Origin: Hyphochytrium catenoides
Taxonomy: Eukaryota > Protista > Hyphochytriomycota
Length of the DNA stretch: 64,000 nucleotides
Direction of reading: 5' to 3'
NCBI GenBank assembly: GCA_900088475.1
Contig: FLMG01000355.1
Span: 326,275-390,274 of the forward strand
Each line of letters starts with the position of its first letter. The first letter of the stretch is position 1. The translations under genes and the position numbers were made by a program. This document shows, piece by piece, positions 603 to 64,000 of this stretch. The notes beneath the pieces were generated by a model that saw nothing but the letters and a program-made list of their open reading frames with translations, was not told the DNA's origin and made no database searches.

Positions 603-2141
603 ACTGCCGCTTGTCTAGTAGAACGCTTCGTTCAAGTCAGGTCGCTGCCTTCTAGACGGCGATGCCCCAGAGTAAACACTGCCGATCTCTAGAGGTAATT
701 TGAGACCGACTCTGAAAGCTCTGACATCGCTCCAGCCTCCAGCAGCAAGGCACAGAATCTACGATGAGCTCGTACAAAAGATCTGCTGACAAGATCTTTG
801 TGTCCCGTCTGACGCCTGACTTCAAGCTTCGCAGTGCCGATTGAGAATAAGTAAGGAAGGAATCAAGAACGCCTTCTATTCTCCGCACTACTATCGTGGA
901 TAAGGGGTAGATTCGATATCAGAACAATGCTCTTGTCAGGTCGTTATGGGTCTTGACGGTCTTCAATCCTCAACTTTCCACGGTCAACAACAGGGTGTCG
1001 TCTTTTGTTCTGGCAGCCCCTGTCTGCAGCATTGGAAGCAAGGCTCCTCTTCAGATCATAAATCGACGCTATCCAGCATGGCAAGAGATGACGTGTCCGC
1101 GGCCACCATTACAAGTGCAAGGACACATCCATACCATAGATGCGCCATTGCCTCAATGCTCCTGTTGGAGTCATCACAACGCGGTCACCTATTGACGACG
1201 ATGCCTTCGTCGTGGTCCTCTATTAACATCAAGCCGGGAAAGCGTCTCCTATGGCGCAACAAACATTATAGAAGATCGGCTTCTTCTCTTACGACTATAC
1301 AAAAGGACATGTATGGCAGACCGAAGAAGAGAGATCTTGTGGTGGCGGCTGAAGAATACGTTAGCACAAAGCCACTCGCCTGCTCTTCACCGCATTGACA
1401 AAAGGGTCCAACAGGGACATTGCCAGGATCTTTCCTAGAACGAAGCCTCTGTCGTCTCTCTTCCGTATTTCCCGCAGGAGGTTAGCTCCAATGCACTACC
1501 CACACGTCTTCTTCCAATTTGTTTGGGAGGAACAGGTCAAGTAATAAGGATGACGACGGTGACACTGAAGGCAGGAGCGTGGTCACGCTCATGAAGGAAA
1601 GAAACAGCCGCCCTAGAGGCGGAGAAATCCCCAACACGAAGAACTATCTTGCCTCTCCCAACAGCAGGTTTGCCGCTTCTACTGATCACCTTTTTTTTGT
1701 AACACATGTATGGCGTCATGGCTTTTGACAACAACTTCAACAACGCAGTCGACGAGCGAGTGGTCGGCGGAGATTAGAGCTGTAACTGTCATCACTGACA
1801 CTACTACTTCCTTTCTCGACAGAAAGAAAGCAACCAATAAGCTCTCACACCGACTTCCCAACAAAACTACATCTCCTACGTAAGAGAAGCCATACAGACA
1901 CAGCTCTTGTCACGACAAGAGAAGAAGAGCCCCTTCAACAACACAGAAAACTACTTCAACATCTCAATCACCCTAGAGAGAGGAGGGAAGCCTACATCAT
2001 CGTCCGCGAACTGTACAAAGTAAGTAACAAATAACTCCTCTCACTCCAGGTCATAGCCACCACTAGAACCACCGACGACCACTCACCACTAAACAACGCC
2101 TATTGCAATTCCTCAGCATCACTATCACAGAGAGTACTCAT

Positions 2142-2421
2142 CACTACTGAAGACCTTCACCTACACCCATCAGTGTACCGAAGGAAATAAAGTGCCATGG
2201 AACCCAAGCCCTAATAAGAGCAGCTCTTCTTGGACCTCTGCCGGTAGACCGTGGAGTAGAGATCTGGTTCGATATTTGCAGGCTATAGTGCTATAGCAGA
2301 TTCTATGCGTATCAAACCAGATTTTCAACTACAAGGTCTACCAGAGGGCCAAGAGCTGCTCTTAGGGGTTGTTGGGTTTCCCATGGCCCTTCATTTCTTC
2401 CTTCAGTAGTAGTGTTGATAG
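2142..2421. repeat. Long imperfect inverted repeat / fold-back (~95-nt core arms), possibly a MITE relic or hairpin-RNA locus
   Basis: 2180-2274 (gaaggaaataaagtgccatggaacccaa...gatctggttcgata) is the imperfect reverse complement of 2310-2404. Inner palindrome gctatag-tg-ctatagc at 2282-2297. Outer match of cactactgaag (2142) with cttcagtagtagtg (2401). Confidence 0.85.
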
Positions 2422-3009
2422 AACCAGCCAGATCTCTACTTCTTCAAGGTCTCACAGAAAAGTATCTTCTGTCCTTGATTCTCATCTAACAAGCGCTACT
2501 TCGTCGAAATTACCTCTCCTACATTAGGCAACGCCGAAGTTACTCATAAAGGGCTTGTGATTATTTAGAATGTTCTCAATGGTCCACTTTGTGTCCACCA
2601 CAGTGCTGTACAGCGTAGTAGCGTGTTGAAATTAGAATTACACAACCCCTATTCGGAATCTGTATGGACGTTACAGTGATGTGATGACCAAAGCCGAATG
2701 TTTCCCCATGATAAAAGCCTTAGCTGTTCTACCGGCAAAAAGATGACAAGCAAATGATAATGAATGACCGGCATCATCAGTGTGCTTCCCACGAAGCGAC
2801 AGTGCTGTTTGCGACGGAGCGGGCGGGAGGAAGCGATCTTGTCTATGATGGGACTTGTCATCGGAACACCACCACAGAAAGAATCTGACATCCTTGGCGC
2901 TGTTTAAGGTCTCTTGCTGGTCAATGCGCTGAGGACTGTAAGGAACAAGACATCAATAACAAGGGAGGGCCATCATCTAGGATTCGAACGCGTAGACTCG
3001 AGGAGCGCC

Positions 3010-5365: not shown

Positions 5366-5371
5366 AAAAAA
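5366..5371 (-). terminator. RNA polymerase III oligo-T terminator of tRNA-Leu
   Basis: T6 run on the minus strand a few nt after the discriminator base. Confidence 0.75.
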
Positions 5372-5375
5372 GATG

Positions 5376-5457
5376 TGGGCGAAGTGGGATTCGAACCCAC
5401 GCGTGCGAACACACCGCAACTTGAGTGCGGCACCTTAACCAACTCGGTCATCCGCCC
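5376..5457 (-). tRNA. trnL-CAA: tRNA-Leu (anticodon CAA)
   Basis: GGGCGGATGACCGAGTTGGTTAAGGTGCCGCACTCAAGTTGCGGTGTGTTCGCACGCGTGGGTTCGAATCCCACTTCGCCCA: acceptor stem, anticodon arm CCGCA-CTCAAGT-TGCGG, long variable arm, GTTCGAATC T-loop. No intron. Confidence 0.97.
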
Positions 5458-6782
5458 ATCTGACTGAGAGTCGAAGCCACACCTTTGGTCTATGTACCTG
5501 CCATAGAACAAACACCATTTATTCAATGATACGGTGTACTACGCTGTACAGAATACAGCGGGAGAGTGTGAGAGAAGAGCGAGGAAGAGGACCATTTACG
5601 AACTACACCAACTCTTTTGTCTTTTTCGGGGCTGCCCACCATTTTTTTCCCATGGAAAGAAACATACTTCATCTTGTTGTGTACTAATAACCTTTTGTCA
5701 TCAACTTTGAAAGTATCAATGCTTCCGAAATAATCCAATTCGGCGTTGTGTTTGTGGGAAGAGCCAGTTTTGGGTGATAGAGAGCCAGAGTGCCCAAAGA
5801 GCCATTTCTGGTTCGGAGGCTCTCTTACTCCGTCCCACCTTCAATCTTCGTATCTCTTGCTCTCTCTATCTTGGATCATCCACTCTATCTCCCTCTTGAA
5901 TGGATGTCCGTCTTCTTATCAATGGCTTTGCTCAACTCCTTCTCATCTCTGTCGCCCAAGTAGATATATTGACTACCTCTGTCTCTTCTCCCTGTTGCGT
6001 CTTTCTCTCTCTCTCTCTCTGTATCTCTCTCCCTCGTCTCTCTCTGTGTTTCTGTCTTTCTCTCTCCCACTCACTCTTCTTCTTAGTCTTTCCCACCACT
6101 TCAATCGCAAGGTCAACGGTTTGACATCTGCTGATGTGTTGACGATGAAGAGCTTTGAGCTCCAGATGCATCTTCACAAGTGCAGGCAAACATTCTTAGT
6201 ATGAGCTCCTCTCTCCTGCCCAGTGGGCTGGCTCTATGCACTGGCGGACTACTCTTCTCTTCCACCGTATCGTATCTTATGGCTCCATTGCGGCTGAGAT
6301 TAGGCCCTGGGCGGACAAGGGTTCTGCCTTTAGATAGGATAGCAAGATAACCCCAACCCTTGTGATGAGAGACAATCACCACCATGTTTGTTGCCAGTCT
6401 CTCTTACTTCTGTCTCTCTGCCTCCATTCTCTCTACTATATTTATCGCCTCTTCCCCCCCGCGGCGGAGACTCCATAATCTCCATTTTCTGACTGAGAGT
6501 TCCAGCCACCCCGATCTCAGCTTGCGTGCCATTCTTGCGCAGTCTGACGAAGCTGGCTCACTCTCACACGCTCTCGCTCCCAGTCCCGTCGCTTACACCT
6601 TCGGAACGGGGTTGCCAGACTGAGCCTTTGTTGGTGTCATTTAAATTTTCTCCCTAGCTGCAGACCTTCAGCAGCTTCGGAGTTCGGAGTTCGCGACCCA
6701 GCTAACAGCGCGTCCGCACCTTTATTCTTTTCTCTCTATCTTCATAACTTATCGTGCTTTCGCTGTTTCCAACTGAAGCACA

Positions 6783-8270
6783 ATGCCGCCAAAATCTTTA
6801 AAATACCTGCTAGGCTTGGCCCTGCTGGCGTCCACAGCTGCTGCCAATCAATCTCTCTCCTGCTTCAACTACTCTCCATTTTATCATGAAGATTACTTTA
6901 ACGGAAGGGTAGCAGAACTGCTCGACAGAGACTTCGCGACAGCCAGACGGCGTGGCATTACGTGCGTCAAGACGTTTCACACCGCATTTTTTGGCAATTC
7001 GGTCACTGATGTAGCTGCAAAGCACGGACTTAAAGTTGTACTCGGAGTTTTCATGCAGGATCCAAGCCTTCTGGGGGGGGAAGTAGACAACGCCATCAAA
7101 GCCTGCCAGCAACGTCCTGACAGTCTAATCGGTATCGTCGTGGGCAATGAGAACCTTAACGGGGGGAATCAGGGAGAGTTCTTCGCCATCATTGACAAGA
7201 TCAAAGGCTCTGGCTGCAGAGTCCCCGTCGGAACAGCTCAAAAGTCCCCTACTTACCTGGACGGTACCTTCTCCAAAGAGTTTGCGGAGAAGGTGGACTT
7301 CATGGGCGTCTCTCTTTACTCTTTCTTTGGTCCTATCCCTAACCAGGAAAGACCCATCGAACCCATCAGGGGGCAATTAGATAGACTGAGAGGACTTTGG
7401 GAAGGGCAAGGGCACAAATTCAGAGCCACAGAGATTGGCTGGCCGACAGGTGGAAGCTTTGCTGGCAACGTTGGTTCCTTGGAAACTGGCCAGCGGTTTA
7501 TTGATCAGATTGCAGGGCCGGTCTGTGAGGGGTATTTTGGCGATTGGATTGCCTTTTTCCAAATGTTTGATGAGCCCAACAAGCAAGGAGGGGAATTTGA
7601 GAGGCATTTCGGGCTTCTACAGCCTGACGGCTCTAACAAGCTTAATATTGACGTCCTGATCCAGTGCTCGAAAGATGCTAATGCTGTTGCTGCTCCTCCG
7701 GCGGGGCCAGAGGCTCCTGCACGTGGTCCTCCAGCACCTGCACCTGGCCCTCCTGCACCTCCTCCAGAGCCTGCACCTACTCCTGCTCCGCCAGCTCCCA
7801 CTCCTGCTCCTCCGTCCACGACTCCCATGTATCCACTCGCTACTGATGCTCCAAAAGATTCCACTGAACCAGTGGTCGTCCAACTTCCCGGTGCTACCTT
7901 TACGCCTAGCCCTGCTGATGGTAGCGCCGAAGGCAATGAGGGCCCCGTCGGCCCGGTGAACGATGATGCAGATAATCAATTGGGCGGTGCGCAGGATGAC
8001 TCTGACTATGAAGACGAAGGAGAGGACGATGGAAGCTCTTCCCTTTCTGTGATCGGTAACGACGGCTTGTCCGGCCCAGACAACAATGTGCCCTGCCCCA
8101 TTGGCCAGCTCCCGGTCTCTGTTGAGGGCATTGGGACCTTCTGTACCGCTATTCCTATCTGTGTTGGTGGGATACCTGACGGCAACTGTCCTCCTCAGCA
8201 AGCGGGTCTCCCCAATGGCGCCAGATGTGCTATCGTGAAGACTGGGGTGGCTGGCTGTGTAAGCAACTAA
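6783..8270 (+). CDS. Secreted GH17 beta-1,3-glucanase/glucanosyltransferase with Pro/Ala linker and Cys-rich C-terminal module
   Basis: 495-aa intronless ORF. Signal peptide; GH17 motifs IVVGNE (acid/base), TEIGWPTGG (nucleophile) and FERHFGL; PAPAP linker; C-terminal CP..PVSVEG..TFC...ICVG....GNCP...GLP.G..C..VKTGV.GC. Confidence 0.92.
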   Translation: MPPKSLKYLLGLALLASTAAANQSLSCFNYSPFYHEDYFNGRVAELLDRDFATARRRGITCVKTFHTAFFGNSVTDVAAKHGLKVVLGVFMQDPSLLGGEVDNAIKACQQRPDSLIGIVVGNENLNGGNQGEFFAIIDKIKGSGCRVPVGTAQKSPTYLDGTFSKEFAEKVDFMGVSLYSFFGPIPNQERPIEPIRGQLDRLRGLWEGQGHKFRATEIGWPTGGSFAGNVGSLETGQRFIDQIAGPVCEGYFGDWIAFFQMFDEPNKQGGEFERHFGLLQPDGSNKLNIDVLIQCSKDANAVAAPPAGPEAPARGPPAPAPGPPAPPPEPAPTPAPPAPTPAPPSTTPMYPLATDAPKDSTEPVVVQLPGATFTPSPADGSAEGNEGPVGPVNDDADNQLGGAQDDSDYEDEGEDDGSSSLSVIGNDGLSGPDNNVPCPIGQLPVSVEGIGTFCTAIPICVGGIPDGNCPPQQAGLPNGARCAIVKTGVAGCVSN

Positions 8271-26537: not shown

Positions 26538-29500
26538 TCATTCAAAGCAATAAAGCTGCAGAGCCTTCTCACACGCCTTAAAGGTGGCGTTTTGTTTACT
26601 CCCTCCCTTTCCCCTAGCCACCAACCGCCGCCTGATAAAGAGTCCCACAGTGAACTGTCTATTGTGAGGTGGGCCTGTAGTTTCCAGCACCTCAAACCTA
26701 GAACAAGCAACGTTAGCGAAGCTCATTCGTGCTCCGATGCTACTAGCTGCGACGACTCCTCCATTCTCCTCGCCATTCGCTTCAGTATACAATTTATCCT
26801 AAAATTCACCCTTCCTTGACTCTGCACTGGCACTACCTACGCTGCCCGCTAGTTACCCCTGCCCAATCAGTATGTACCATAGTTTAAGGTTGGCGTCTTC
26901 TCCGTTGGCGCTATTGACCGAGTCGAACAGCCTGGTCTTCGAGTCCAGCCACTCCTTCGACACAATGGCCTGTGATAGCAAGACTGAGATTAGGAATACG
27001 CACTGGGAGGCTCCAAAAGCCAAAGCAAGCACTTTCCCACCTTTCGTATCCGTGGGTAGAGCACTTTTCTGGAGAATTTTTCTACCGCTCCAAGTCCCTG
27101 TGCAGATGGAGAGGACAATTAGTCATAAGAATCGGAAGAGAGACTCACCAGCTCCCGGAACTAAACTCGTTGTCTTCTACTACGGCTCATGGTGCTGTAA
27201 TGACCGCCGAGCGCTGTTGGCTTTCACTTATATCTTGGTGCAGTGCTCAAGTTGCGCCCCTTTGCACTCTAACCTCCTCCTCTATTTTCTCTCAGGCCCC
27301 AAACTACGCACTCACCTGGTCTATGTATAGCGCCGCCAAGAATGACTCGAAAGCGTCCGAGAGCATTCCTTGCCTCGCCTTCGTGTCTTCTTCTAGTACT
27401 GCTGACGGGTTGTACCTGATGTAAGGCACGAGTCCGATAGCGCTTGTGATAGCAGCCAGGCGGTTGTTATTAACCAAGGCCGAACGGAGGAGAGTGAGAT
27501 GGTTCTCTTGGTGAACAGGGAAATGATCGTACAGGAATCTAGAAGATGAAGCGGACATGAAAGAACAGTCAGAGCTCTTTTCATCCTCGACTTCTCTACT
27601 CTACTCCTATTTCGGTAAGCCCCGCGGCGGCCTATACGTTCCAGGTCTTACTACTGTCATCCATAGCATGCCTACTTAGCACTTCACGTTCTCAAGTTGG
27701 CACACGGCGCTGTCTACTATGGTATCCCTGTCGCGAGCACCTGGAGATTATAAGCTGCAGGACCGCGTCGCCCAAGAACTCCAAGCGCTGGTTTTGTCCC
27801 AGGCCCATCACATCAGACTCAACAACGAAGTTTGGGTGAGTGAGGCTTTGTATCAAGAGTCGCGGGCTATTGAACTTGATCCCAACATCTTGCTCAAAGG
27901 TCCGGTACCTTTCACGATACAGAGCCAGATCAGACCCATTCAAAGAGGCCAGCGAAGGGTAGGGGCACCTATATGAGGGAAAGGAATGACAAGAACCCAT
28001 GGCTTGCAAAGAAAGGTCGTCCAGAAAGCAGCTACAGTATAACTCCAGAGTAGCTGAACCCAAGGATCAGGATGTAAAGAGACCACAGGGTTGGACAGCG
28101 ATCATGGCATGCATACCTTTCATAAGCTAGAGAGCTCCTAACTTCCTCTTCATCTTTATGCATTCCGGCTCGAATGGTCTTCAGTTCCTCGTTAGACAGC
28201 CATATAGACCGGAGATCAGGCTCCTGGGAAAAGAGAAGATCACCGTATAGTTTTCTGCAAGCAGCCAGCCCCTGAGATCCAGATAATTAGAGTTAGACAC
28301 TTTCTGCCAGTCAATGCCACGGGCTGCATCAAAGACGTCACACTTTTGAGAGCAAGATGAAAGAAACCGCCGTTACATGTCGAAATGACGGTACCACGGA
28401 GACTTCCAGCACGCAGAACGTCGAAGGGACGACGACAAACAAAGCTTACCTGGTCTAAAAATAGGGCTCCAGCCAGCGCCTCTACGCAGTCCGCAAGCAG
28501 GTTCTGCTTATCAAACTTTGACATTCTATCAGATCGGAGTGAGCAGAGAACGTAGTCCTGGAACCTGAATCGGAGAGCGATATCGCATAAAATCTCGTTG
28601 TTGACAATCCCTGAGAGAGGAGACGGGTGTTTGGTTGGAAGAAGAGGGGGGAGGGGAAGAGGGGAGGAGAGTAAGCAAGCAGGAAGGACTCAGCCGGCTT
28701 AACTTCTGCAATCGACAAGCACAAAAAGCGAGTGCGGAAATGCCTGGCGGATCTGAGAACATGGCGTGGGCGAACGGGGTAGCGCGGACGTAGATGTATA
28801 GCATCAGCATGGATAGACTATATGACGTATGGGTACGGAGGAGGCCTGCTCGTGCTGCCCTACCAGCCCTAAACCGTGTAAGCCCTCCTTCTTGTTCTTC
28901 AGGAAGGTGAAAGTAGAGGGAAGTAGAGGTGATTAGCTCTATCACGGCGTCCCCTAAGAACTCTAGGCGCTGATTGTGCCCATCGAAGGACCAACGGAGA
29001 TTGGATGAAGTCCAGCGGAGTGCCACCCGCGAATCTTCCTGATAGGTTGCCTGCACCCCTCGGGCCTGCGCACATTCTATGTAAGGAACTAGAGAAAGGA
29101 AATAGCTTCCCTCTCATAAAGCTAAGGCAAGGAGATAGCCGTAACCTCATGTGAGTTCCTCTTCCGCTGCCGCCTACCCTAGTGTCCGTACATGGGCCCT
29201 CTTAGTGCTTTCCTCGTTTCGTCACTTTGTGGCTAACTTTGCACCCCTAATGACTAGAGTGTTGACCGCTACGCCGACCACCACCACTTATGATTTCCTG
29301 ACTTGGGGCTTTATTCGCACCTTCTGTTTTTCAGTTTCTAGTACATCTCTTTCCATGGTGTGCATCAACCGAGCTCTTTTGGATGTCCCTTCTGAGTCCT
29401 TGCCCTGAAGCAACAGCAGTGCAGCTTGGGCGCTGTCCATACTATCCAATTCGTTCTCCGCAACGGCCTAAACAACGTTGAATATCAGACAAGACCTAAG

Positions 29501-32500
29501 AGAAGAGGTTTCCTACAATGCAGATGATAGTCTCTATTTAACCCTATACCTTCTCAGCCTGAGGGTAGCGGTGTCCGACCCTCACAAGCGCTTTTTGGCC
29601 CTCGGGGGTGTTCAGGGACTGCATGCCTGTTGGGGCCGTTAGTGAATCCGAAAGAATGAAGAGGAAGCACGAGGAATCTTTGATTGAGGGACTAGGCTTA
29701 AATGGAAAGAGAAAGGGAGACGAGAGAAGAATGGTGGAGTGACACGGGGACGCAGAAATAACAATGCACCACCATTTAATTTGAGCATGTCGGAGCTAAG
29801 AAGACAGAGGCACCACTGCGCACCGAGTAGAGAGAAATGTGAATAATGGGAGAAGAGGAAGGTTGCGGAAGGAGGCAGGATAGGGCCAAGTACTCTTGAG
29901 TCACGACGACGTGAGGGAGCTGCTTAGAGGAGGTTTGGATTGGCAAGTTTTAAGAGAATGTGAAATGACAGCAATGTATGCGCACCAGCATCCACATAGG
30001 AAGGATGAGTGAACGCTTGTCTAAGCAGTGCCTTGTTTTTGAAGGTGACACCAATCTTCGCTTCTAGCTTTATGAAGTCTGTGAAGTTTCGGACGTAACG
30101 AAGTATAATAGGCAGAACCCCAGCCATCTACGCAGAGCAACAAATGGAAGGGCGGATAAGAAGAAGGTTACGAAGAAGTCAGAGAGAGCATGCTCACGGA
30201 CGGGCCCATTGAGGCTCATTCACGTTTAGCATCGAGAGACGCGGGACAGACGAACCACTTCAAGGAGAGGAGGCTGTACAGAAAGGACGGTGTAGTCCAA
30301 GTTATGGAACAAAGTATAGAAAAGAAGCGCTCCGACACACTACCTCGGTTATATCGGTTCGGAGGCCCGTAAGGAAGCAAATTTCGCTAAGGAAACATTT
30401 TGAGCTTGCTTCTCCTTGGTCAGCATCAGGCTGTCGCTGATCTTCCGCCATCTTCCAGATCTGTTTACCCATAAAGTACCCCTTGCAGCCTCGAATCTGC
30501 AACTGAACGAGAAATAGAGCATGAGATCACNNNNNNNNNTCAGTACTTCTTCAGCACAACTGAGCCCTTTGCCTTGTGGGCAAATGTTTCCAGAGGGATC
30601 AGTTTTGTACTGAAGAAGAGAATAGTCAACATTTGTACCAATCGTCCTTCTTCTCTCTCTCTCTCTCTTTTTTGGATAGACCTACAATTTTCTGACTAGG
30701 AAGCACCTCATCAACTCGGAAGAATTTCTCTGTGACGAAGAAAGGGTCGGGATTAGCTACGCTCAACTCAAGGACAGATGCAATGCACCCCAAAATGGGT
30801 AAAAAGGTTGACAGAGTCTGCGGCCTACAGTTAAGATCATATGTTGTCCAACTTCTTACTCAGATATGGGGCCGTCAACACCTGGTCTACAAGGTTCTCG
30901 CCATTGTTGATTGCATCCAGCGCTGTAACGGACTGACGGGCCTTCAGAGCTCTGTGGGAACCAAAATATAAACAACGGGCAGAAAAAAGAGGCAATTGAC
31001 ATATTGAAGAAACTTGATATCGGAAAAGACCCGAACAACGAAGCGAGGAGGCGGATCACAAGCACAGTGAACGTATGTCACATACTTAAAACTTATCGCT
31101 CCGAGCACAAAGCACTGAAAGGGAGATAAGGGTTGCGAAGGTAGGGACCCCGCTATGCATGTTCAGAACAGAGGCAAGATAATTCTGAGCTTACTCAACG
31201 ACAGCCTTAAGAGAAAGGTGTGGTGATGTCCCTAGACCGCATTGCGTGGCCGTAGGCAGCTTGGTCGGATCCTCCTTCTACACGTAACGTGAGCGAATAA
31301 TCGTTAGAAAATGACCGCAAGTTTTTGGAAAAATTGGAGGATATGGTGAAGCCGAAAGACCACAGCTAGTGATAGATACAGGCAAGGACTGAGGCTTCCC
31401 TCCCTACCGTTGGGTCTATGAAGCGAGGGTAGAGGTAAAATTCGCAGAGGTCAGCAGGAAGACCGTTAAGAATGACGCTCCGAAACCCGCAAATGGATTG
31501 CCCTGCCAAAGCTAGCTTAGAAGAACGTCCAGAGGCCTAGGGCTGCGCTGCCCGAATATTCCTCTGCATCGACTCTGACAAGATGTCTCTTGGTGCTCCT
31601 CTGACTCGCTCTTCCGCTAGTTAGTATCTTTGGTTCCGAGGGCTCCTCTAACCGCTCTAAGTCTGGTCGGACTCTCTTGGCGCTAGCTAACAGCAAGTTG
31701 CCCGCTTCTCTTCCTTTGTACTCTATTGCTCTCTTCAATACATTCGTCAAGTCCCTTGGGCAACATCATTCTCTATACACCCAGCATACCGATATCCAGC
31801 ACATCTTCCAGCAGCATCTTCGAGAACGCTCCTAGCTCCTCTTCATAGTGGCCTCTTTCTCCCTTGACCAAGTACGCCTCTAGTAAGCTGGCCACATCCT
31901 CTGGAACGGGCTCTGGCTCGAAGGTGACAGACTGCATCACTCTATCTCGAACGAACTCCAGCTAGTAATGGAGTGAAGAGAAACATCAAAAATTGTCAAC
32001 CCCGCAGACGTTCATTGCAAGACAAGAAGCAGATTGATAAAGCATAATGAGACAGAGTCTTGAGCTATCTATTTTGATGAGGTAGCATTGAGCGTACGTA
32101 CCAGAGGGACGGCGGGCAACTCGCCAAGGCGAATGACGAGGAACCCGTCAAACACGAAGTCATTACCATTAACACTAAGCGTCGTCGGGCCTTGGAAGCG
32201 AGGTGGCGTGTCTGTCAACAGCGAAGGTTTAGACTTGTGTCGGTACGCCTATTTTCGTTCTTTCTTCCCTCCGATGCAATGTTCTACCTAAGTCGTCTAC
32301 TTCTTTGAAAGTGGCAACTCCTTCCCGTTATACTGCTCCCATTTATTCCTTTCCAACCCTTCAGCAGTATGCCCTGCTGCTTGGCTTCCCCTGGGCACTC
32401 TTGGGGTAGCACTTCCTCCATAGATTTCTCACCAGGATCAATTTTCCATGTCATCCTTAGACAATGTAATTTGCCTATATCTTCCAGCTTTTCGATTTGA

Positions 32501-33942
32501 AGGTTCTCTACAGCGGCATAAGTCAGAAGGGCACCAAAGTGGTTGAACAAGGGCCTTACCTGGAGGGGGCGAAGCGTTTTTCTTCTCACCTGCAGGGAGC
32601 CAGACAAAGCTTCTTTAGCACACGATGAAAAGAGTAGGACGAATGAAGAAGATCATTGGGTGATAACGTTAGGGACTAGGATGGAGGGGAGACATGTAGG
32701 AGGAGGAATGAAGAAGGTCATTGGGTGATAACGTCAGGGACTAGGATGAAGGGGAAACATGTAGGCACAATAACTAAAGAGTCATGTGGCTTACTGGGTT
32801 CATTTCGCGCTGCGGCCGCTGGACTGCTCCAGTGTCTGTTGGTATCTTTCTTCCGGAAGTTCGTTGGGGTATCCCCACCTAGAAAACATTCGCTTCGTTG
32901 TAAGTGGTCCAGAGATTTGAAGGAGAAGCTAACGGAATGAGAATGAAAGAAGGTCCCTACCTCCACGACTAGACCGGCGCTCCTGTCCACCCCGGTATCT
33001 ATCAGAAGAGCTCCTTCTCTCAGAACGCTGATAGTCCCCTTCATCGATCGCTAGATAGATTGATAGACCACCGGTAGCGGGTGTAGCAAGGTTCACGATA
33101 AGTCGAGGGGAGGAGAGAAGAAGGTGGTGCGGTGAGGCGAAGAAGATCAAGTTGGACGAAAGGATCGAAGCAAACTACTCTCCCCCCGTGATATAGTAGA
33201 ACGACTGAAAGAAAAATACACTAGACACTAGAGGGATCCACTGCACGTTCAGAGAGAGGCATGGAGAGGGAGAGCTGACATAGAGAGGTCGGCCTTCTGA
33301 ATCAGGTTGTGCACCTTTACCTTCTCGGGGTCGTTTCCTTTTGACAGCATCGGCCTTGAAGGGTGTCTCTTCACGGGATGCGTGTCTGGGACTATCTAAC
33401 CTGTAACTCTTATCAGTGCGAGAAGAGTAGTAAACGCCACAGCCCTGGTCCTCTCTCAGCGTGTCTTGTTGCTGATCGGATGTCACTCTATAATCATGCC
33501 AAGTTGTCTGATTACCATGCCCTTGGTTGGTTACAAGTGGATAGACTTGTGAGTGCGGCGAGTTCTCCCGAGCATATTGGACGTTTTGTCGGTAGGCCGC
33601 AGGTGACTGGTAAGAAGAAGGAGGAGGATATGTGGAATGCTGCGGATAGGGAGTCAGCATGTCATACTCCATTGAGGGAGGAGACTGGGTTGATACCCCG
33701 GCCCCATCAGGTCTTTGCTGATAATAGTGCCAAGAAGCCATGCTCTCCGATTGAGGGTATGAGTAATATGCAGGGTGGATGTGTGACTGTGGCTGAGCTT
33801 CTTGGTGGCCACCGTGATAAGAATCTCTTGCAGCACCAGGAGACACCTCTTGACCAGCGGAAGGACTCTGATGGTGGCTGCTGGCGTTCCGTTGGTAAGA
33901 AGACCGACCTAGGTTTCGGCTTATCTGACCAGGTGGTGACAT
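26538..33942 (-). CDS. DROSHA: Drosha-clade class 2 RNase III (oomycete DCL2-like): low-complexity/RS N-terminus, central domain, two RNase III domains, dsRBD
   Basis: RIIIDa: [11 protein letters not shown]...[14 protein letters not shown]...[10 protein letters not shown]. RIIIDb: [37 protein letters not shown]. Then EWLDSKTRL and ds[25 protein letters not shown]. Central [22 protein letters not shown] resembles the Drosha central domain. No helicase seen. Start tentative; N gap at 30531-30539. Confidence 0.9.
32641..32765. repeat. Intronic tandem duplication (2 x ~60 nt, period 65) in the Drosha-like gene
   Basis: gaatgaagaagatcattgggtgataacgttagggactaggatggaggggagacatgtagg recurs at 32706 with a few substitutions. 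Confidence 0.9.
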
Positions 33943-34703
33943 GCCTCCCCGTCCGTAACTACTATCTGTTTCACAAAAGTTTCCTTTCGTGGGCTTCTTA
34001 TATTGTGCTTGGCATCCAGTTCTCACGATGCGTTGAAGCTATAAACTGTCAAGAAGCGCCCTCATACTGGGAGTTAGGGCTGCTCAAAACGTCCGCCAAA
34101 GAGAAGTAAAGATGTGATATATCTCCAGATTGTGCTCTTTCTCTTCCGCCTCATTGGCCCAGGCAAGGGAGGGAGCTCAGCCTAAGACGTTCTTATCTGC
34201 CTCTTCGACCTGCTTTCCTTACCTTTGTCAGCCTACCATCTCACTCTGTCTGTCACTCTGTCTTGGACTCTCTGGCTCCTTCAACCAATCAAGAAAACCT
34301 CCTCCATCTTCTGATGCACTCCACTTTTTCTGGCTCTCTCTCTGCCTTTAACCCCTCCATCCGAAAATGACCCCTCCTGTCTGAAAATACCACCAGTTAC
34401 ACTTCATGCCCCCTAATTCAATACGAGTAGACTGATGACATACATGCATTTGCCCCTGGATTGTCGTACCTAAGCCAAGGGCCTACGAGAACAAATGTGG
34501 GGTTCCGAAAATATAAGGTCTGGTGATGAGAAGCAATATTCCTCGACATGGCCAAGGCAGACAAGCGTAGTAAGAAGAAGAACCACCACCAGTGGCGGAA
34601 AGAGGAAGAAGAACGAACGAAGAAGGTGATGATGGTGATGATTCTGATTTTGCCACCGAGAGAACATTGCCTTCGCTAGGCATGATGGCACCTTGCTCTC
34701 CTA

Positions 34704-34755
34704 CTTTCAGATGATGATTCATCAAGCCACTTTCAGATGATTCAAGCCACTTTCA
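34704..34755. repeat. Short tandem repeat whose copies differ by two 3-nt duplications
   Basis: ctttcagatgatgattcatcaagcca is followed by ctttcagatgattcaagcca. Confidence 0.85.
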
Positions 34756-36718
34756 TGATCACTTCTTATCTTACTGGGTATCTTTCCTATTTATTATATA
34801 TTATCGTTCAAAGAAGAAGCGGCGGCGGAGTCATCATCCATTGATGACCTCTTCTCCTGCTCCTTATCATCAACGACGGGCCAGGAAGTTAAATTGTTCT
34901 TCTTCATAACTTCTTGTCTTCTTATCGACCGCTGCTGCCGTCCAATCTGTAGTTGATGACCGACCCTGAAAGAAAGAAGATCCTCCCTACTTCTTCTTCC
35001 TACTGTTTCTTTTTTTTCAAAAAATAAGTCAAGATAATAAACATCACTACTCATCCACAACTCAAGAAGCGTGTCCATACCTCTCCTCCTCCTTAGGCTA
35101 TCTGGTTCATCAATCACACAGAAGGAAGCCAGCAAGGGATCATCAACTACTACGGAGTTCCATGAGGATTGCGACCTCAGCCACAGCTTTCTCTTTGTAT
35201 CAAGTGTCTTCGTTGTATCTAAACTTCGTTACGTACTTCATCAAGATTGTTATTTTTATTAACAACCGACGACACAAACACCACATCATCATCATCTTTC
35301 CCGCGCACCTCACCGCAACAACCCGCAGGAGAGTCAGCTAGACTAGCAGCAATCAGTTTACTAGATCCTCGTGAAATGTATGGAAAGAAGATGAAGAAGG
35401 AGGGACAAATAAAGAAGTAACCAAGCCCGGCAGCTCCTGCTGCTTCTGGTGGACATTCCGTCGATTCATATTATGTTGACTGCATGATAGGCATATCACC
35501 TATCGGAAGATCGTCGCGGAGGAGGAGGATAATAATAACGCCAAATTTGAATGACTATTTATAACTAATCCCCAACGACGACACGCACGGCAGCATCACA
35601 TGAGTACAGCTGTAGTACCACCCCTCATATCCACCAATTTTCTGGTATTACTCCGTACCACTATCGACAGCGACCCATCAACAGCAGCAAGTAAGTGCCG
35701 TGATGAATATAGTGCTGCGATGATACTGTGGTGAGAGCGCTAGCGCAGTTATTATCTTCCTTACTCTTCATCAACAATCAGTCATCACCACTATTATACT
35801 TAAGACATTCTACAGGACGACGTAGTAGAATAGCGACCGACCAACAACGACACTGTAAGCAAGCAGAAGAGGACATGGCGAGTGTCTGAGCCAGGAGGGA
35901 GAACGCTACGTGCGTCGCCCCTACATCCATCATCATTCATCACCAGGAGGAGTTACCGATCGATGAGGATGATGACTTAGTTAGCGGTGACAGATCCTCT
36001 TCCTACCTCAAGGACGACGTGCAGGGGCCACCCACTGACAAAGTTATTTTAGGCATGTCCCAAACTATTATTCAGACACGAAGGTAAGAAGTTGACCCCC
36101 TTTACTCTCAACCCTCCTGGTCCCCCCAGAGGCCATAGATAGTACCAGGTGGTCCCAACCGACAGATGTCCACAAACTTCGTGGCTACGAATTTCAAAAA
36201 AGCCGTTACTCTGTTTAACTTTGTTGGGGTTGTTTGATGACTTGTGTTGGACGCTCCTCCGGCTCTGCTGCTGCATCAGTCTGAGCAGAGGACAGACAGC
36301 CCATAGAGGGCCAGGCAACCTGAAGCCAACAAGGCTTCGAACAGAGAAGCTTAGCGCAAGACAGAGATGATGTCACGCAGCACGACTCCGCTCCTCCGTT
36401 GTTGGTGGTGGTGTCCTGGTGCTGGGCCGCAGAGGTGAAGAGGAGATGGAGGGTAGGATAACGTAGGTGAGTTCCTCCACTCGGTCGTCAGAAGTGGGCT
36501 GACCGACGTTAGGTTATTGCTCGCTCAAGCCTCCTCAGACAGGTGCAGTGAGTGAGCCTAGAATGGCTCTACTACATGTTTGGAAACCCAAAGGTGCTTT
36601 TTGGCGTTTGACCTCGTTAATGACGACCGATTAGACAGTGAGTCCCACCTTGTAGTGAAGTGCCTAAAGAAACGACCAAGACCCATAACTTTACTGATCG
36701 GCCACATCAGTCCTATGA

Positions 36719-38755
36719 ATGTTAAAAGTAGAGACAATATCTGCCTCTTTCTACACAGAAAAGCCAGGATTCAAGAGCCTTTTTGCGTCGTCATCAAAGG
36801 AACGGCAGGACGGACTGCATCCTCCAGTCCAGACTATCGTCTCAGATCTTTGGCGTGAGGCCATGATGAATAGCAGGGCTGTCTACCCTCTTGCTTCTTC
36901 TTACAATGGAGGACGAGAAGAACGACACATTACCCCCAAAGATCAGCTGCGCCAACAGCAGGAAGTGTTATCGAGACGAGAAAGGACCCAGCTCGGCCTA
37001 AGGATGTTGCTTGACTTCATGTTTCTCCTCTTCGCCAGCATCCTCCTGGCCTCGCTCTACTTGGGCATCTACACAGCCCTAGTCATTCACTTCCCCCAAC
37101 CCGTGACAGTGAGCTACTGCACCGATATATGTCCACCTTCGGACTGCGTGGGCGTCTTTCCTTACCCGACACCATGTGCCCTGTCGTACAGCTTCGGTGG
37201 GTACCTGTATGGAACTATCTTCAATGTCCCAGGCTGCTCCTGCGGAGTTTTGTTTGTCTATGCGGAGACCTTTGGTGTCAAGAGGTGGAGATCAAAGAAC
37301 CGGGATCATAGGACCATGATGAGAAGAAAAGTAGCGGGAGTCTTGACTCTTACAGGACTCTCTCTTTCTCTCTACACGGTCCAAGTCTTTCTTCTTTCCA
37401 ACTTCCACTTTTCTACCCAGCAGACTTTCTACTTTCTGGTGATGCTCTGGGTCTTCTTTGACCGTAGACTCAAAGACTTCATCCTTCCTTTCATAGCTAA
37501 GCTTCTTCCTAACTTGACGGCCGTTGCCTGTTTAGAGTTCGTCTTTCCAACCACTCTGTTTACCGAACTCTCCATTTCTCAGCGGAAAAATGTCTTTGTG
37601 AGCTTTCTTCTGCCTTCTATCTTCTTCCTTCTTTCCTTTATAACAAAGCAGTGTCTGAAGCAGCTGTTGGCAGTCCATGGGGAGGAGCTCTCCTCTGACT
37701 CTATTCTCTTCTCCATGTACGTGGTGTACCAGATGTTGCAGCTCACTGCCAGCATCAGTCGGGGGACCGACACGTTAGCAGTGATCATTGCCTCCACTGT
37801 CTCCTCCTGCGCGGGCTATATTCTCACCGTGGTATGGAACCTGTGGAGATTGGCCAAGGTCACTAGCGAGGAGCAGAGCAAGATCAGTGGGCGTCACCAA
37901 TCTCTCAACTTCTGGACCTTCTTCTGGTCTGGCCTAAACGGAAGGCCAACAGGGACGGCAGAAAGAGTCAGAGCGAGAAGAATTAGCACCCATACAAGCG
38001 ATCAACTAGCAGTTATTCAAGGGACATCGCATGAAGCACCACTGGCGGTGAGCGCGCCAGCGTCAGATACACGACATGACTTTGAGAAAGCTCAGCAAGA
38101 GCAGCCAAAACTACTGGGAGAGAATGGGGGAAGTGGCAAGAGAGATCCTTGTGCAGCTTCAGAAAGGTCTGCACATGCTGGCAAGGGCCGAGAGGTGCCA
38201 GGAACAGAAAGAGGGAAGGGTCGTCCGCAGGCATTTTCGCCTGTACGCCCCTTAGCTCTGCTAACACAGGGGGAGAAGAGCTTAACGAGGCCATCGCTTG
38301 ACCCTTCCGGACATAGTGAACAGAGAAAAGATGAGATAGAGCCAACCGCCATGGAAATATCGGTGTTCAACTCCACCATATTATGGAAACGTATGGCAAT
38401 CAGTATGACTGTGGCGATGGTCTCTGGGGTTGGGGCCCTAACTTCTGTCATACTCTATAGCAACTTCTTCCACTCTACAATCATCACCTCTTCCCCTTGC
38501 TTTGAACCCAAGGCGTCATTCTACACAGCGCTCCGAGTTCGGAGTCAGCATTTCTTTGTGGTGCTGATAGTTGTGGCACTGATGATGGTCTTCATCTCTA
38601 TTCTAGAGATGATGCAGCTCGGCATCCTGAAGAGTTGGCAGCGTGATCGATTGAATATCATACGCACAGCGCTCATTCTACTACTCTGTTATGGACCCTA
38701 CTTCTTGTCCTGGGTTCTCTATAGCATGATAGTCAATAAGGTGAGCGGATGCTAA
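36719..38755 (+). CDS. Uncharacterised multipass membrane protein (intronless; true start possibly 36863)
   Basis: 678-aa ORF with roughly 10-12 hydrophobic segments, a Cys-rich loop (YCTDICPPSDC..PTPC) after the first TM, and a long hydrophilic loop before the last three TMs. Confidence 0.8.
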   Translation: MLKVETISASFYTEKPGFKSLFASSSKERQDGLHPPVQTIVSDLWREAMMNSRAVYPLASSYNGGREERHITPKDQLRQQQEVLSRRERTQLGLRMLLDFMFLLFASILLASLYLGIYTALVIHFPQPVTVSYCTDICPPSDCVGVFPYPTPCALSYSFGGYLYGTIFNVPGCSCGVLFVYAETFGVKRWRSKNRDHRTMMRRKVAGVLTLTGLSLSLYTVQVFLLSNFHFSTQQTFYFLVMLWVFFDRRLKDFILPFIAKLLPNLTAVACLEFVFPTTLFTELSISQRKNVFVSFLLPSIFFLLSFITKQCLKQLLAVHGEELSSDSILFSMYVVYQMLQLTASISRGTDTLAVIIASTVSSCAGYILTVVWNLWRLAKVTSEEQSKISGRHQSLNFWTFFWSGLNGRPTGTAERVRARRISTHTSDQLAVIQGTSHEAPLAVSAPASDTRHDFEKAQQEQPKLLGENGGSGKRDPCAASERSAHAGKGREVPGTERGKGRPQAFSPVRPLALLTQGEKSLTRPSLDPSGHSEQRKDEIEPTAMEISVFNSTILWKRMAISMTVAMVSGVGALTSVILYSNFFHSTIITSSPCFEPKASFYTALRVRSQHFFVVLIVVALMMVFISILEMMQLGILKSWQRDRLNIIRTALILLLCYGPYFLSWVLYSMIVNKVSGC

Positions 38756-63879: not shown

Positions 63880-64000
63880 GGAGAGAGGCCAGAGGGGAGA
63901 GAGAGAGTGCGACAACGACAGACCAGTTAGGGCGAGAGAGACAGAGAGACAGAGAGAGAGAGAGAGAGAGTGTGAGAAAGAGAGAGTGAGTGTGAGAGAG
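63880..64000. repeat. (GA)n-rich microsatellite
   Basis: Directly visible GA/GAGT tract at the window end. Confidence 0.9.

What the first reader, a model, noticed from the sequence alone, without database searches (positions are those of the whole stretch)
34440..36000. Intergenic island saturated with 3-4 nt tandem micro-duplications (candidate localised mutational or footprint system)
Seen: very frequent short stutters of many different motifs (aagaagaag-cggcggcgg-agtcatcatcc, ttcttcttc, ctgctgcc, gataataa, ccaccacc, gacgac), by eye far denser than in other intergenic DNA here (19.1-20.9, 54-57 kb). Internal control: the tandem copies at 34704-34755 differ by two +3 nt duplications. The motifs are heterogeneous, so this is not one expanded microsatellite. 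Established: staggered cuts repaired by fill-in, and excision footprints of 3-bp-TSD transposons (CACTA, PIF/Harbinger), leave such duplications. Inference: the island is repeatedly hit by such a process, or by an undescribed repeat-targeted mutagenesis. It lies just upstream of the Drosha-like gene.
Basis: partly seen in the sequence, partly recalled or inferred. Interest (0 to 1): 0.75.

Follow-up and report, generated by a model that had tools for sequence, protein, structure and literature searches.

The report
Three-base duplication island between two genes
A 1.5-2 kb stretch of non-coding DNA between two genes of a water-mould-like protist has been lengthened by roughly 100-150 tiny three-letter duplications, each copied right next to its original. 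That is far more than in neighbouring DNA and points to a local mutational process whose cause is still unknown.

Summary
Perfect 3-nt tandem duplications reach 50/kb at 34.5-36.5 kb, against 16-18/kb elsewhere (z 13-16 against shuffles). Its two densest 500-bp bins are the top two of 528 bins in 264 kb of this contig.

The excess is almost all at 3 nt, with a minor 4-nt part and nothing at 1, 2, 5 or 6 nt. The island is non-coding, single-copy, free of assembly gaps, and has the host's normal dinucleotide signature.

A model of about 150 randomly placed 3-nt duplications plus about 2 substitutions per duplication reproduces its statistics. About 20% of its length was therefore made this way.

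Paralogous pairs inside stutter islands differ by 7 three-nt gaps per 11 mismatches. Retroelement copies show 38 per 2786, so the process is local, not general decay.

- About half the duplications have no flanking microhomology.
- There is no target motif.
- Arrays never grow long.

This argues against microsatellite slippage and transposon footprints. It is compatible with fill-in of short staggered breaks, as in topoisomerase II (Top2) duplications, but the size mode is 3, not 4.

Weaker islands recur along the contig, and another first-stage note (s1-367417) reported the same stutter elsewhere in this genome. The mechanism is not settled.

The parts
34550..36000 (.). Core of the 3-nt tandem-duplication island (non-coding spacer)
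   Evidence: P(base i = base i+3) is 0.38-0.50 in every 200-bp bin, against about 0.27 outside. Density is about 50 events/kb. Stop codons match random expectation (199 against 199-200). No Pfam, Rfam or terminal-repeat features were found.
36001..36450 (.). Weaker tail of the island, reaching towards the start of the right-hand gene
   Evidence: 19 events in bin 36001-36500, more than 2 sd above the mean. P(d=3) is 0.29-0.33.
34704..34760 (+). Local tandem duplication of a 20-26 nt unit; its copies differ only by two 3-nt duplications (GAT and TCA)
   Evidence: Sequence read, alignment, repeat family D3. It serves as an internal clock: 2 triplet duplications and 0 substitutions.
33943..34440 (.). 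Stutter-free zone rich in CT, next to the RNase III gene start (likely promoter or 5'UTR); forms the left boundary
   Evidence: 7 events per 500 bp. A 12-nt CT-rich repeat lies at 34241-34271. P(d=3) is 0.27.
26538..33942 (-). Left flanking gene: Drosha/Dicer-like, with two RNase III domains, transcribed away from the island
Evidence: Pfam Ribonuclease_3 and Ribonucleas_3_3 match minus-strand ORFs at 27695-28063 and 28532-29056.
36719..38755 (+). Right flanking ORF (678 aa, hydrophobic, no Pfam family), transcribed away from the island
   Evidence: It shows codon-type long-range 3-periodicity, unlike the island.
1396..2907 (.). Second, weaker stutter island in the window; contains a fold-back (arms 2176-2288 and 2291-2408) whose arms differ by five 3-nt gaps out of ten
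   Evidence: 31 events/kb. The arm alignment has 91 matches, 11 mismatches and gaps of 1, 2, 2, 2, 3, 3, 3, 3, 3 and 5 nt.

Best explanation
What it is (shown): a single-copy, non-coding spacer of about 2 kb between two divergently oriented genes. It has been expanded by roughly 100-150 independent tandem duplications of exactly 3 bp, plus about a dozen of 4 bp. The events are spread evenly, fall on any sequence, and are interleaved with point substitutions at about 1 duplication per 2 substitutions. About 20% of the present DNA is the product of these events. The local rate, relative to substitutions, is tens of times that of other non-coding DNA and of dead retroelement copies in the same genome. 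The spacer is therefore a mutational hot zone, not ordinary neutral decay.

How it works (inferred): the duplications look like de novo duplications of unique sequence. I take them to be made when short staggered breaks or nicks are filled in and the ends joined without homology, by NHEJ-type repair. The best-documented example is trapped topoisomerase II. Classical microsatellite slippage or transposon excision fits less well. I take the hot zone to be a place where such breaks recur, for example a nucleosome-free or torsionally stressed intergenic region. The enzyme responsible, and the reason for a 3-bp rather than 4-bp mode, are unknown.
For: Size spectrum: the excess is +36/kb at k=3 (z 14.8) and +5.8/kb at k=4 (z 4.9). 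There is none at k=1, 5, 6, 7 or 8, and a deficit at k=2.

Range of the signal: the autocorrelation peak at d=3 (+0.139) decays to baseline by d=9-12, unlike the persistent 3-periodicity of a real ORF.

Generative model:
- Random sequence plus about 100 randomly placed 3-nt duplications reproduces the run lengths and the spacing between events.
- About 150 duplications with 2 substitutions each reproduces the whole adjacent-triplet Hamming spectrum (208/485/727/576 simulated, 209/484/745/558 observed).
- The same model reproduces the d=3, 6 and 9 autocorrelation.
- It does not produce the 4-nt events (5 simulated, 18 observed).

De novo character:
- 52 of 99 runs are exactly 6 nt, so they have no microhomology on either side.
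- Runs of 9 nt or more are no commoner than random re-hits predict (15 against 12.9 +/- 3.6).
- The longest triplet run in 264 kb is 16 nt.
- 256 exactly bounded sites show no flank motif (information content 0.02 bit or less per position), and units follow the trinucleotide background.

Locality:
- Control intergenic DNA has a k3 excess of only +1.7/kb.
- Most ORF-free gaps are normal, with a median of 16.8/kb.
- Retroelement loci have 13-20/kb.
- 3-nt gaps per mismatch are 7/11 in island paralogue pairs against 38/2786 in retroelement pairs (odds ratio 47, p = 4e-9).

Other support: Ku is encoded in the genome. De novo 1-4 bp duplications by end-filling and NHEJ after Top2 cleavage are documented, and they are enriched in highly transcribed regions (10.1101/2020.05.03.075358; PMC8795545).
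Against: - The documented Top2 signature peaks at 4 bp and includes 2 bp. Here 3 bp outnumbers 4 bp about 6:1, 2 bp shows no excess, and in the 11 weaker islands 4 bp is barely enriched (z 2.5).
- Apart from transposases, I know of no eukaryotic nuclease that makes a 3-nt stagger (own knowledge).
- A pure 3-nt spectrum is also what frame-preserving selection gives.
- No direct evidence of breaks, transcription or chromatin state is available.
- The retroelement baseline is partly coding, and its pairs are not independent.
- The other islands were chosen by their k3 density, so their k3 excess is circular.
- Flanking-gene orientation is not significantly associated with stutter density (p = 0.16), so a promoter link is not shown.
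- Raw reads could not be inspected.
Confidence: 0.42

Rival explanations
1. Cryptic simplicity by replication slippage. An unconstrained spacer accumulates short slipped-strand duplications. The 3-4 nt window arises because 1-2 nt loops are efficiently corrected by mismatch repair, and larger slips are intrinsically rare.
For: - Heterogeneous short motifs far above shuffle expectation are the definition of cryptically simple DNA.
- Most short insertions in other genomes are tandem duplications (Messer and Arndt 2007, as cited in PMC2654908).
- The 3-nt gaps between retroelement copies are also about half tandem duplications, and they outnumber 2-nt gaps (38 against 20). This hints at a mild genome-wide 3-nt preference.
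Against: - About half of the excess runs have no microhomology at all. Slippage needs the primer end to re-pair, so newborn duplications should span 7 nt or more (inference).
- 2-copy runs show no tendency to grow to 3 copies or more, beyond random re-hits, and the genome has no long triplet arrays.
- Slippage does not explain why only about 10% of ORF-free gaps are affected.
- Slippage does not explain the roughly 20-50-fold local rate.
- At least 8 MutS_V loci exist, so a missing MutS-beta is not indicated. They could not be classified.
Confidence: 0.28
2. Relic of frame-constrained evolution. The island is, or recently was, a low-complexity protein-coding region. One candidate is an N-terminal extension of the Drosha-like gene. 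In such a region only codon-sized duplications survived selection.
For: - The spectrum is almost purely 3 nt, with no 1-2 nt excess.
- The island abuts the 5' end of a gene whose first exon is itself low-complexity (Q/S/P-rich ORF at 33175-34026, 11-16 events per 500 bp).
- The summed length of the top five stop-free segments is slightly high (P = 0.02-0.14).
Against: - The stop-codon count equals random expectation (199 against 199-200), and the longest stop-free segment (144 aa) is within expectation (P = 0.07-0.20).
- There is no long-range 3-periodicity.
- 4-nt duplications are three-fold enriched.
- Motif and reverse-complement motif are used equally.
- There are no Pfam hits, and the translations look random.
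- Real long ORFs have the lowest stutter density.
Confidence: 0.07
3. Repeat-targeted mutagenesis or a genome-defence process that stutters duplicated DNA until it is unrecognisable. This is the reader's second idea, and it matches note s1-367417, 'stutter decay of dead DNA'.
For: Both internal paralogue pairs differ mainly by 3-nt duplications: the 20-nt tandem copies at 34704, and the fold-back at 2176-2408.
Against: - The island is single-copy in the 61-Mb assembly.
- 30 retroelement loci, many in multi-copy families at 83-97% identity and several with stops, have ordinary stutter density (13-20/kb).
- Those loci have a gap spectrum dominated by 1-nt gaps.
- The de-stuttered island matches none of them.
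Confidence: 0.05
4. Excision footprints of transposons with a 3-bp target-site duplication (PIF/Harbinger, CACTA) that repeatedly inserted into and left this spacer.
For: The genome encodes about 15 or more PIF/Harbinger-type DDE transposase loci and 5 weak CACTA-type loci. A retained target duplication would be a 3-bp tandem duplication.
Against: - There is no TWA target preference (TAA/TTA units 9 of 256) and no flank motif at all.
- The island contains no terminal inverted repeats, element remnants or resident copies.
- About 100-150 insert-and-excise cycles in 2 kb would be required.
- It does not explain the 4-nt events.
Confidence: 0.03
5. Assembly or sequencing artefact in a highly heterozygous diploid genome assembled from short reads.
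For: The published assembly that fits this genome is a Platanus collapse of a diploid with a SNP frequency of about 0.0275 (PMC5795050). Reads were not available here.
Against: - The island lies in a gapless stretch, with the nearest N more than 3.4 kb away.
- Coverage is reported as 300-600x.
- As far as I know, de Bruijn bubble-popping picks one allele and does not create duplications of unique 3-mers (own knowledge).
- The same signature recurs in about a dozen discrete places and not elsewhere.
Confidence: 0.03

Closest known systems
Topoisomerase II-initiated de novo duplications (yeast top2-FY,RG and K720N; human indel signature ID17 / ID_TOP2alpha)
   Same: Both involve small duplications of unique sequence 4 bp or shorter. 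Both need no pre-existing repeat and have no strong sequence motif. Both are regionally concentrated; in tumours, in highly transcribed regions.
   Different: The Top2 mode is 4 bp, with 2-bp events as well. Here 3 bp outnumbers 4 bp about 6:1 and 2 bp shows no excess. Here it is a germ-line, evolutionary accumulation in kb-scale intergenic islands of a wild-type organism. Dependence on Top2 or NHEJ is untested.
Cryptically simple DNA (Tautz, Trick and Dover 1986; SIMPLE programme). Cited from my own knowledge; the concept is mentioned in papers listed.
   Same: Local regions where many different tri- and tetranucleotide motifs recur far more than chance, in DNA that is not a microsatellite.
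   Different: The classical explanation is slippage, and the motifs are scrambled over tens of bases. Here the signal is almost entirely strictly adjacent 2-copy triplets (d=3, with little beyond d=6). There is no microhomology requirement and no array growth.
Proto-microsatellite birth by de novo tandem duplication (Messer and Arndt 2007, cited in PMC2654908)
   Same: Short insertions are tandem copies of the adjacent bases. A break-and-end-joining origin has been proposed for them.
   Different: In other genomes insertion sizes fall monotonically from 1 bp (own knowledge) and occur genome-wide. Here there is a sharp 3-bp mode confined to islands.
Excision footprints of 3-bp-TSD DNA transposons (PIF/Harbinger, CACTA/EnSpm)
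   Same: A 3-bp tandem duplication can remain after excision. Such transposases are present in the genome.
   Different: There is no target-site motif and no element remnant, and the required density is implausible.

Membership tests
Microsatellite / expanded trinucleotide repeat | One motif repeated head-to-tail many times (about 5-6 copies or more) | tested here: not met
   84 of 99 runs have 2 copies. The longest run in the island is 13 nt, and the longest in 264 kb is 16 nt. Tandem Repeats Finder reports only trivial arrays.
Cryptically simple DNA (slippage-generated) | Short motifs significantly over-represented locally, relative to composition-matched random sequence | tested here: met
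   z = 13-16 for 3-nt and about 5 for 4-nt duplications against order 0-2 shuffles.
Cryptically simple DNA (slippage-generated) | Origin by slipped-strand mispairing: events favoured by existing repeats or microhomology, with arrays tending to grow | tested here: not met
   52% of runs are exactly 6 nt, with no flanking identity. Runs of 9 nt or more number 15, against 12.9 +/- 3.6 under random placement.
Top2 / ID17-type de novo duplication signature | Duplications of unique 2-4 bp segments in non-repetitive sequence | tested here: met
   Met for 3 and 4 bp: context-free, with no motif. 2 bp shows no excess.
Top2 / ID17-type de novo duplication signature | The most frequent size is 4 bp, the distance between the two Top2 nicks | tested here: not met
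   The excess is +36/kb at 3 bp and +5.8/kb at 4 bp. The literature gives 4 bp as the mode.
Top2 / ID17-type de novo duplication signature | Dependence on NHEJ (Ku, Lig4) and on trapped Top2; enrichment where transcription is high | not testable with these tools
   Ku domain loci exist in the genome. No expression or break data are available.
PIF/Harbinger excision footprints | Duplicated triplet equals the TWA target site (TAA/TTA) | tested here: not met
   TAA/TTA units are 9 of 256 exactly bounded duplications, 1.4 times background.
CACTA / other 3-bp-TSD transposon footprints | Elements or their terminal inverted repeats present at or near the footprints, with a plausible number of events | tested here: not met
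   No terminal inverted repeats or other copies in or around the island. About 100-150 events are needed in 2 kb. There are only 5 weak Transposase_21 loci genome-wide.
Low-complexity protein-coding region | An open frame (stop depletion) and codon-type long-range 3-periodicity | tested here: not met
   Stops are 199, against 199-200 expected. Periodicity is gone by d=9-12, whereas the neighbouring ORF keeps it to d=24. There are no Pfam hits.

The most novel reading that the evidence does not exclude
Hyphochytrium-type genomes may carry kb-scale intergenic hot zones. In them a break-and-fill-in or other homology-independent process would insert exact 3-bp tandem duplications at tens of times the background rate. 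That would be a natural, germ-line mutational signature with a 3-bp mode that matches no described enzyme. The stutter density would then be a fossil map of where a site-unspecific but region-specific DNA-breaking activity works: a topoisomerase-like activity, one linked to recombination initiation, or a domesticated transposase.
Probability: 0.3. Interest if true: 0.75.

Novelty: new variant of a known kind. Interest (0 to 1): 0.55.

Why it matters
Small-indel spectra are normally monotonic and genome-wide. A sharply 3-bp-specific, regionally confined duplication process in non-coding DNA would be a new kind of mutational signature. It would be a way in which spacers grow by about 20% without transposons. 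It could also give a sequence-only read-out of recurrent DNA breakage or repair zones in a little-studied stramenopile.

It also carries a practical warning. Period-3 structure here is not evidence of coding. Gene finders and 'dead gene' readings that rely on triplet indels could be misled in this genome.

Tried and rejected
- Codon-usage log-odds track, to look for hidden exons: uninformative, because genes and island score alike.
- BLAST of the 264 kb against itself, to harvest paralogous non-coding pairs for an indel spectrum: almost nothing usable. Only CT/GA-rich low-complexity tracts and one 56%-identical coding paralogue turned up.
- Divergent-promoter hypothesis: 6 of the 8 strongest islands sit between outward-facing ORFs.
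- CpG or other dinucleotide differences (methylation, foreign origin): none.
- Abutting in-phase 'every triplet doubled' pattern: gap = 0 pairs number 10 against 4.9 +/- 2.1, which is not convincing after multiple testing.
- Mismatch-repair loss: at least 8 MutS_V loci exist. They could not be classified as MSH3 or not, because no more genome letters could be fetched.
- Rad51 triplet-stepping mis-registration: considered and set aside. A shifted register would mismatch the whole paired tract in unique sequence (inference).
- Haplotig search for an allelic copy: the island query found only itself. A second query, on another island, could not be scored.
- The de-stuttered island (2061 nt collapsed to 1657 nt) was compared only with the sequences held locally, without a hit. 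Its search against the whole genome or transposon libraries was left out, because the derived sequence has no reference.
- The costly protein searches were not used, since nothing in the island looks like a protein.
Full report
**Identity and setting.** The window is G000:C3463:326275-390274 of a 61.0-Mb assembly in 4759 contigs.
- These numbers fit the published Hyphochytrium catenoides assembly: 4758 scaffolds plus the mitochondrion, diploid, SNP frequency about 0.0275, assembled with Platanus at 300-600x coverage (PMC5795050). Earlier notes call the organism an oomycete-related pseudofungus. I infer the identity from these numbers and did not test it by sequence.
- Left of the finding lies a minus-strand gene with two RNase III domains (Pfam hits at 27695-28063 and 28532-29056). 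Its first, Q/S/P-rich ORF reaches 34026.
- Right of the finding, a 678-aa hydrophobic ORF starts at 36719 on the plus strand.
- The finding therefore sits in a 2.8-kb spacer between two genes that point away from each other.

- Counting maximal runs of perfect 3-nt tandem duplication (homopolymers excluded) gives 51/kb in 34440-36000, against 18/kb for the window.
- The four 500-bp bins from 34501 hold 30, 22, 28 and 19 events, against a mean of 9.1 (sd 4.3). Only one other bin in the window exceeds 2 sd.
- Against random sequences that keep the mono-, di- or trinucleotide content, z is 13-16. For 4-nt units z is about 5.
- In 200 kb more of the same contig the highest bin has 22 events, so the two densest focal bins rank first and second of 528.
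- All ten trinucleotide classes take part, and 84 of 99 runs are 2-copy.
- The internal control is right. The unit at 34704 carries (GAT)3(TCA)2 where the next copy has (GAT)2(TCA)1, with no substitution, and this cannot be written as one 6-nt tandem event.
- At 200-bp resolution the core is about 34550-36000, with a tail to about 36450. The CT-rich 600 bp next to the RNase III gene start are unaffected.
- No assembly gap lies within 3.4 kb.

**It is not coding, not a repeat and not foreign.**
- The number of stop codons in six frames equals expectation (199 against 199-200). The longest stop-free segment, 144 aa, is within the simulated range.
- The identity excess at distance 3 (+0.139) falls to +0.048 at 6 and +0.028 at 9, then to baseline. 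The neighbouring ORF keeps about +0.03 at every multiple of 3 out to 24.
- Ten island ORFs have no Pfam family, and their translations look like random sequence with doubled residues.
- There is no Rfam match and no terminal inverted or direct repeats.
- There is no second copy in the genome.
- The dinucleotide signature is that of ordinary intergenic DNA here.

**What kind of process made it.**
- Size. The excess is +36/kb at 3 nt and +5.8/kb at 4 nt. It is nil at 1, 5, 6, 7 and 8 nt and negative at 2 nt.
- Simple model. Random sequence into which about 100 3-nt tandem duplications are dropped at random positions reproduces three things: the run-length distribution, the number of runs with 3 copies or more (15 observed, 12.9 +/- 3.6 simulated), and the spacing between events.
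- Model with substitutions. The best fit is about 150 duplications with about 2 substitutions per duplication. It reproduces the full spectrum of adjacent-triplet Hamming distances (209/484/745/558 observed, 208/485/727/576 simulated) and the autocorrelation at 3, 6 and 9.
- The model does not generate the 4-nt events, which are therefore independent.
- Collapsing the duplications shortens the island by 20%.
- Microhomology. 52 of 99 runs are exactly 6 nt long, with no identity on either side. After subtracting the chance background, this is still about half of the excess.
- Context. 256 exactly bounded duplications from this and eleven weaker islands show no flanking motif (0.02 bit or less per position). 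The duplicated triplets follow the local trinucleotide background, with modest deviations: TCA/TGA 2.25-fold up, CTA/TAG 0.12-fold.
- The longest triplet run in 264 kb is 16 nt, so nothing here behaves like an expanding microsatellite.

**The process is local.**
- Most ORF-free gaps have ordinary density (median 16.8/kb); only about one in eight is elevated. About a dozen weaker islands (27-39/kb, 0.5-1.8 kb) occur in the extra 200 kb.
- Control intergenic DNA has a 3-nt excess of only +1.7/kb.
- Thirty retroelement loci, several with stop codons and in families 83-97% identical, have 13-20/kb.
- Between retroelement copies the gaps are 111 of 1 nt, 20 of 2 nt, 38 of 3 nt and 12 of 4 nt. That is 38 three-nt gaps per 2786 mismatches.
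- The two paralogous pairs that happen to lie inside stutter islands are the 20-nt tandem copies and the fold-back at 2176-2408. Together they have 7 three-nt gaps per 11 mismatches (odds ratio 47, p = 4e-9). Three-nt gaps are 7 of their 12 gaps, against a 19% share in retroelements (p = 0.0025).
- Caveats. The retroelement pairs are partly coding and not independent. The weaker islands were chosen by their 3-nt density.

**Reading.**
- Transposon footprints are not supported. There is no TWA or other target, there are no elements, and the number of insertion-excision cycles needed is implausible. The genome does encode PIF/Harbinger-type and a few CACTA-type transposases.
- Repeat-targeted mutagenesis is not supported either, because repeated retroelements are not stuttered and the island is unique.
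- Classical slippage explains the general kind of sequence, known as cryptic simplicity. It does not explain the lack of microhomology, the lack of array growth, or the confinement to islands.
- The features best match de novo duplications made by filling in short staggered ends and joining them without homology. This is documented for trapped topoisomerase II in yeast and in human tumours, where such events also cluster in highly transcribed regions. Ku is present in the genome.
- The misfit is the size. Top2 gives mainly 4 bp and also 2 bp, whereas here 3 bp dominates about 6:1 and 2 bp is absent.
- I therefore commit to 'local break-and-fill-in type de novo duplication' as the most likely mechanism at about 0.4. 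Slippage filtered by mismatch repair follows at about 0.3. The responsible activity remains unknown.

**What could not be done.**
No genome-wide scan or haplotig comparison was possible.
- The de-stuttered sequence was compared only with locally held DNA. Its wider search was left out because the derived string has no reference.

**Earlier notes.** Another first-stage note on a different piece of this genome (s1-367417, not followed up) describes 'stutter decay' of dead DNA, so the scan has seen the same pattern before. My retroelement control argues that this is not a general property of dead DNA. Note s1-365037 (the fold-back at 2142-2421) was checked here and holds.

Noticed in passing
window 5985-6075, 34130-34400, 63880-64000; also L014 about 5370-5530 and L021 about 6880-7005: CT/GA-rich low-complexity tracts of about 100 nt, based on the (CT)n dinucleotide, recur next to ORF starts and cross-match each other in BLAST. 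They are probably polypyrimidine promoter or 5'UTR tracts. They are period-2 simple sequence, in contrast to the period-3 islands.
   Followed up: partly
window 1396-2907 (fold-back arms 2176-2288 / 2291-2408): A second, weaker stutter island (31/kb). It contains an imperfect inverted repeat whose arms differ by five 3-nt gaps out of ten, four of them tandem duplications.
   Followed up: yes
L006:9001-10000 + L007:1-800; L012:1701-3000; L014:9401 to L015:800; L017:8501-10000 (contig positions 49001-50800, 101701-103000, 129401-130800, 158501-160000): The strongest of the dozen other stutter islands (31-39 events/kb). They often contain abutting doubled triplets of different motifs.
   Followed up: partly
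pooled islands: Among exactly bounded 3-nt duplications the unit CTA/TAG is almost absent (1 observed, 8.2 expected) and TCA/TGA is 2.25-fold over-represented. This is unexplained.
   Followed up: no
window 34500-36500: Dinucleotide tandem duplications are depleted in the island (56 observed, 77 expected, z = -2.8).
   Followed up: no
G000:C22:1090-1440 and C23:1143-1493; C2547/C2548 (L022/L023); C4672/C4673: Contigs with neighbouring numbers carry near-identical matches at similar offsets (Ku domain, reverse transcriptase, DDE transposase). They may be retained haplotig pairs of the heterozygous diploid, and would be useful for an allelic indel spectrum.
   Followed up: no
L010:6380-9637 versus L004:8383 to L005:1695 (contig 86380-89637 versus 28383-31695, inverted): A pair of 56%-identical paralogous segments of about 3.3 kb in opposite orientation, 55 kb apart on the same contig. 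They are probably a diverged gene pair.
   Followed up: no
own genome: At least eight separate loci carry a MutS_V domain, suggesting a full eukaryotic MSH complement. They are not classified.
   Followed up: no
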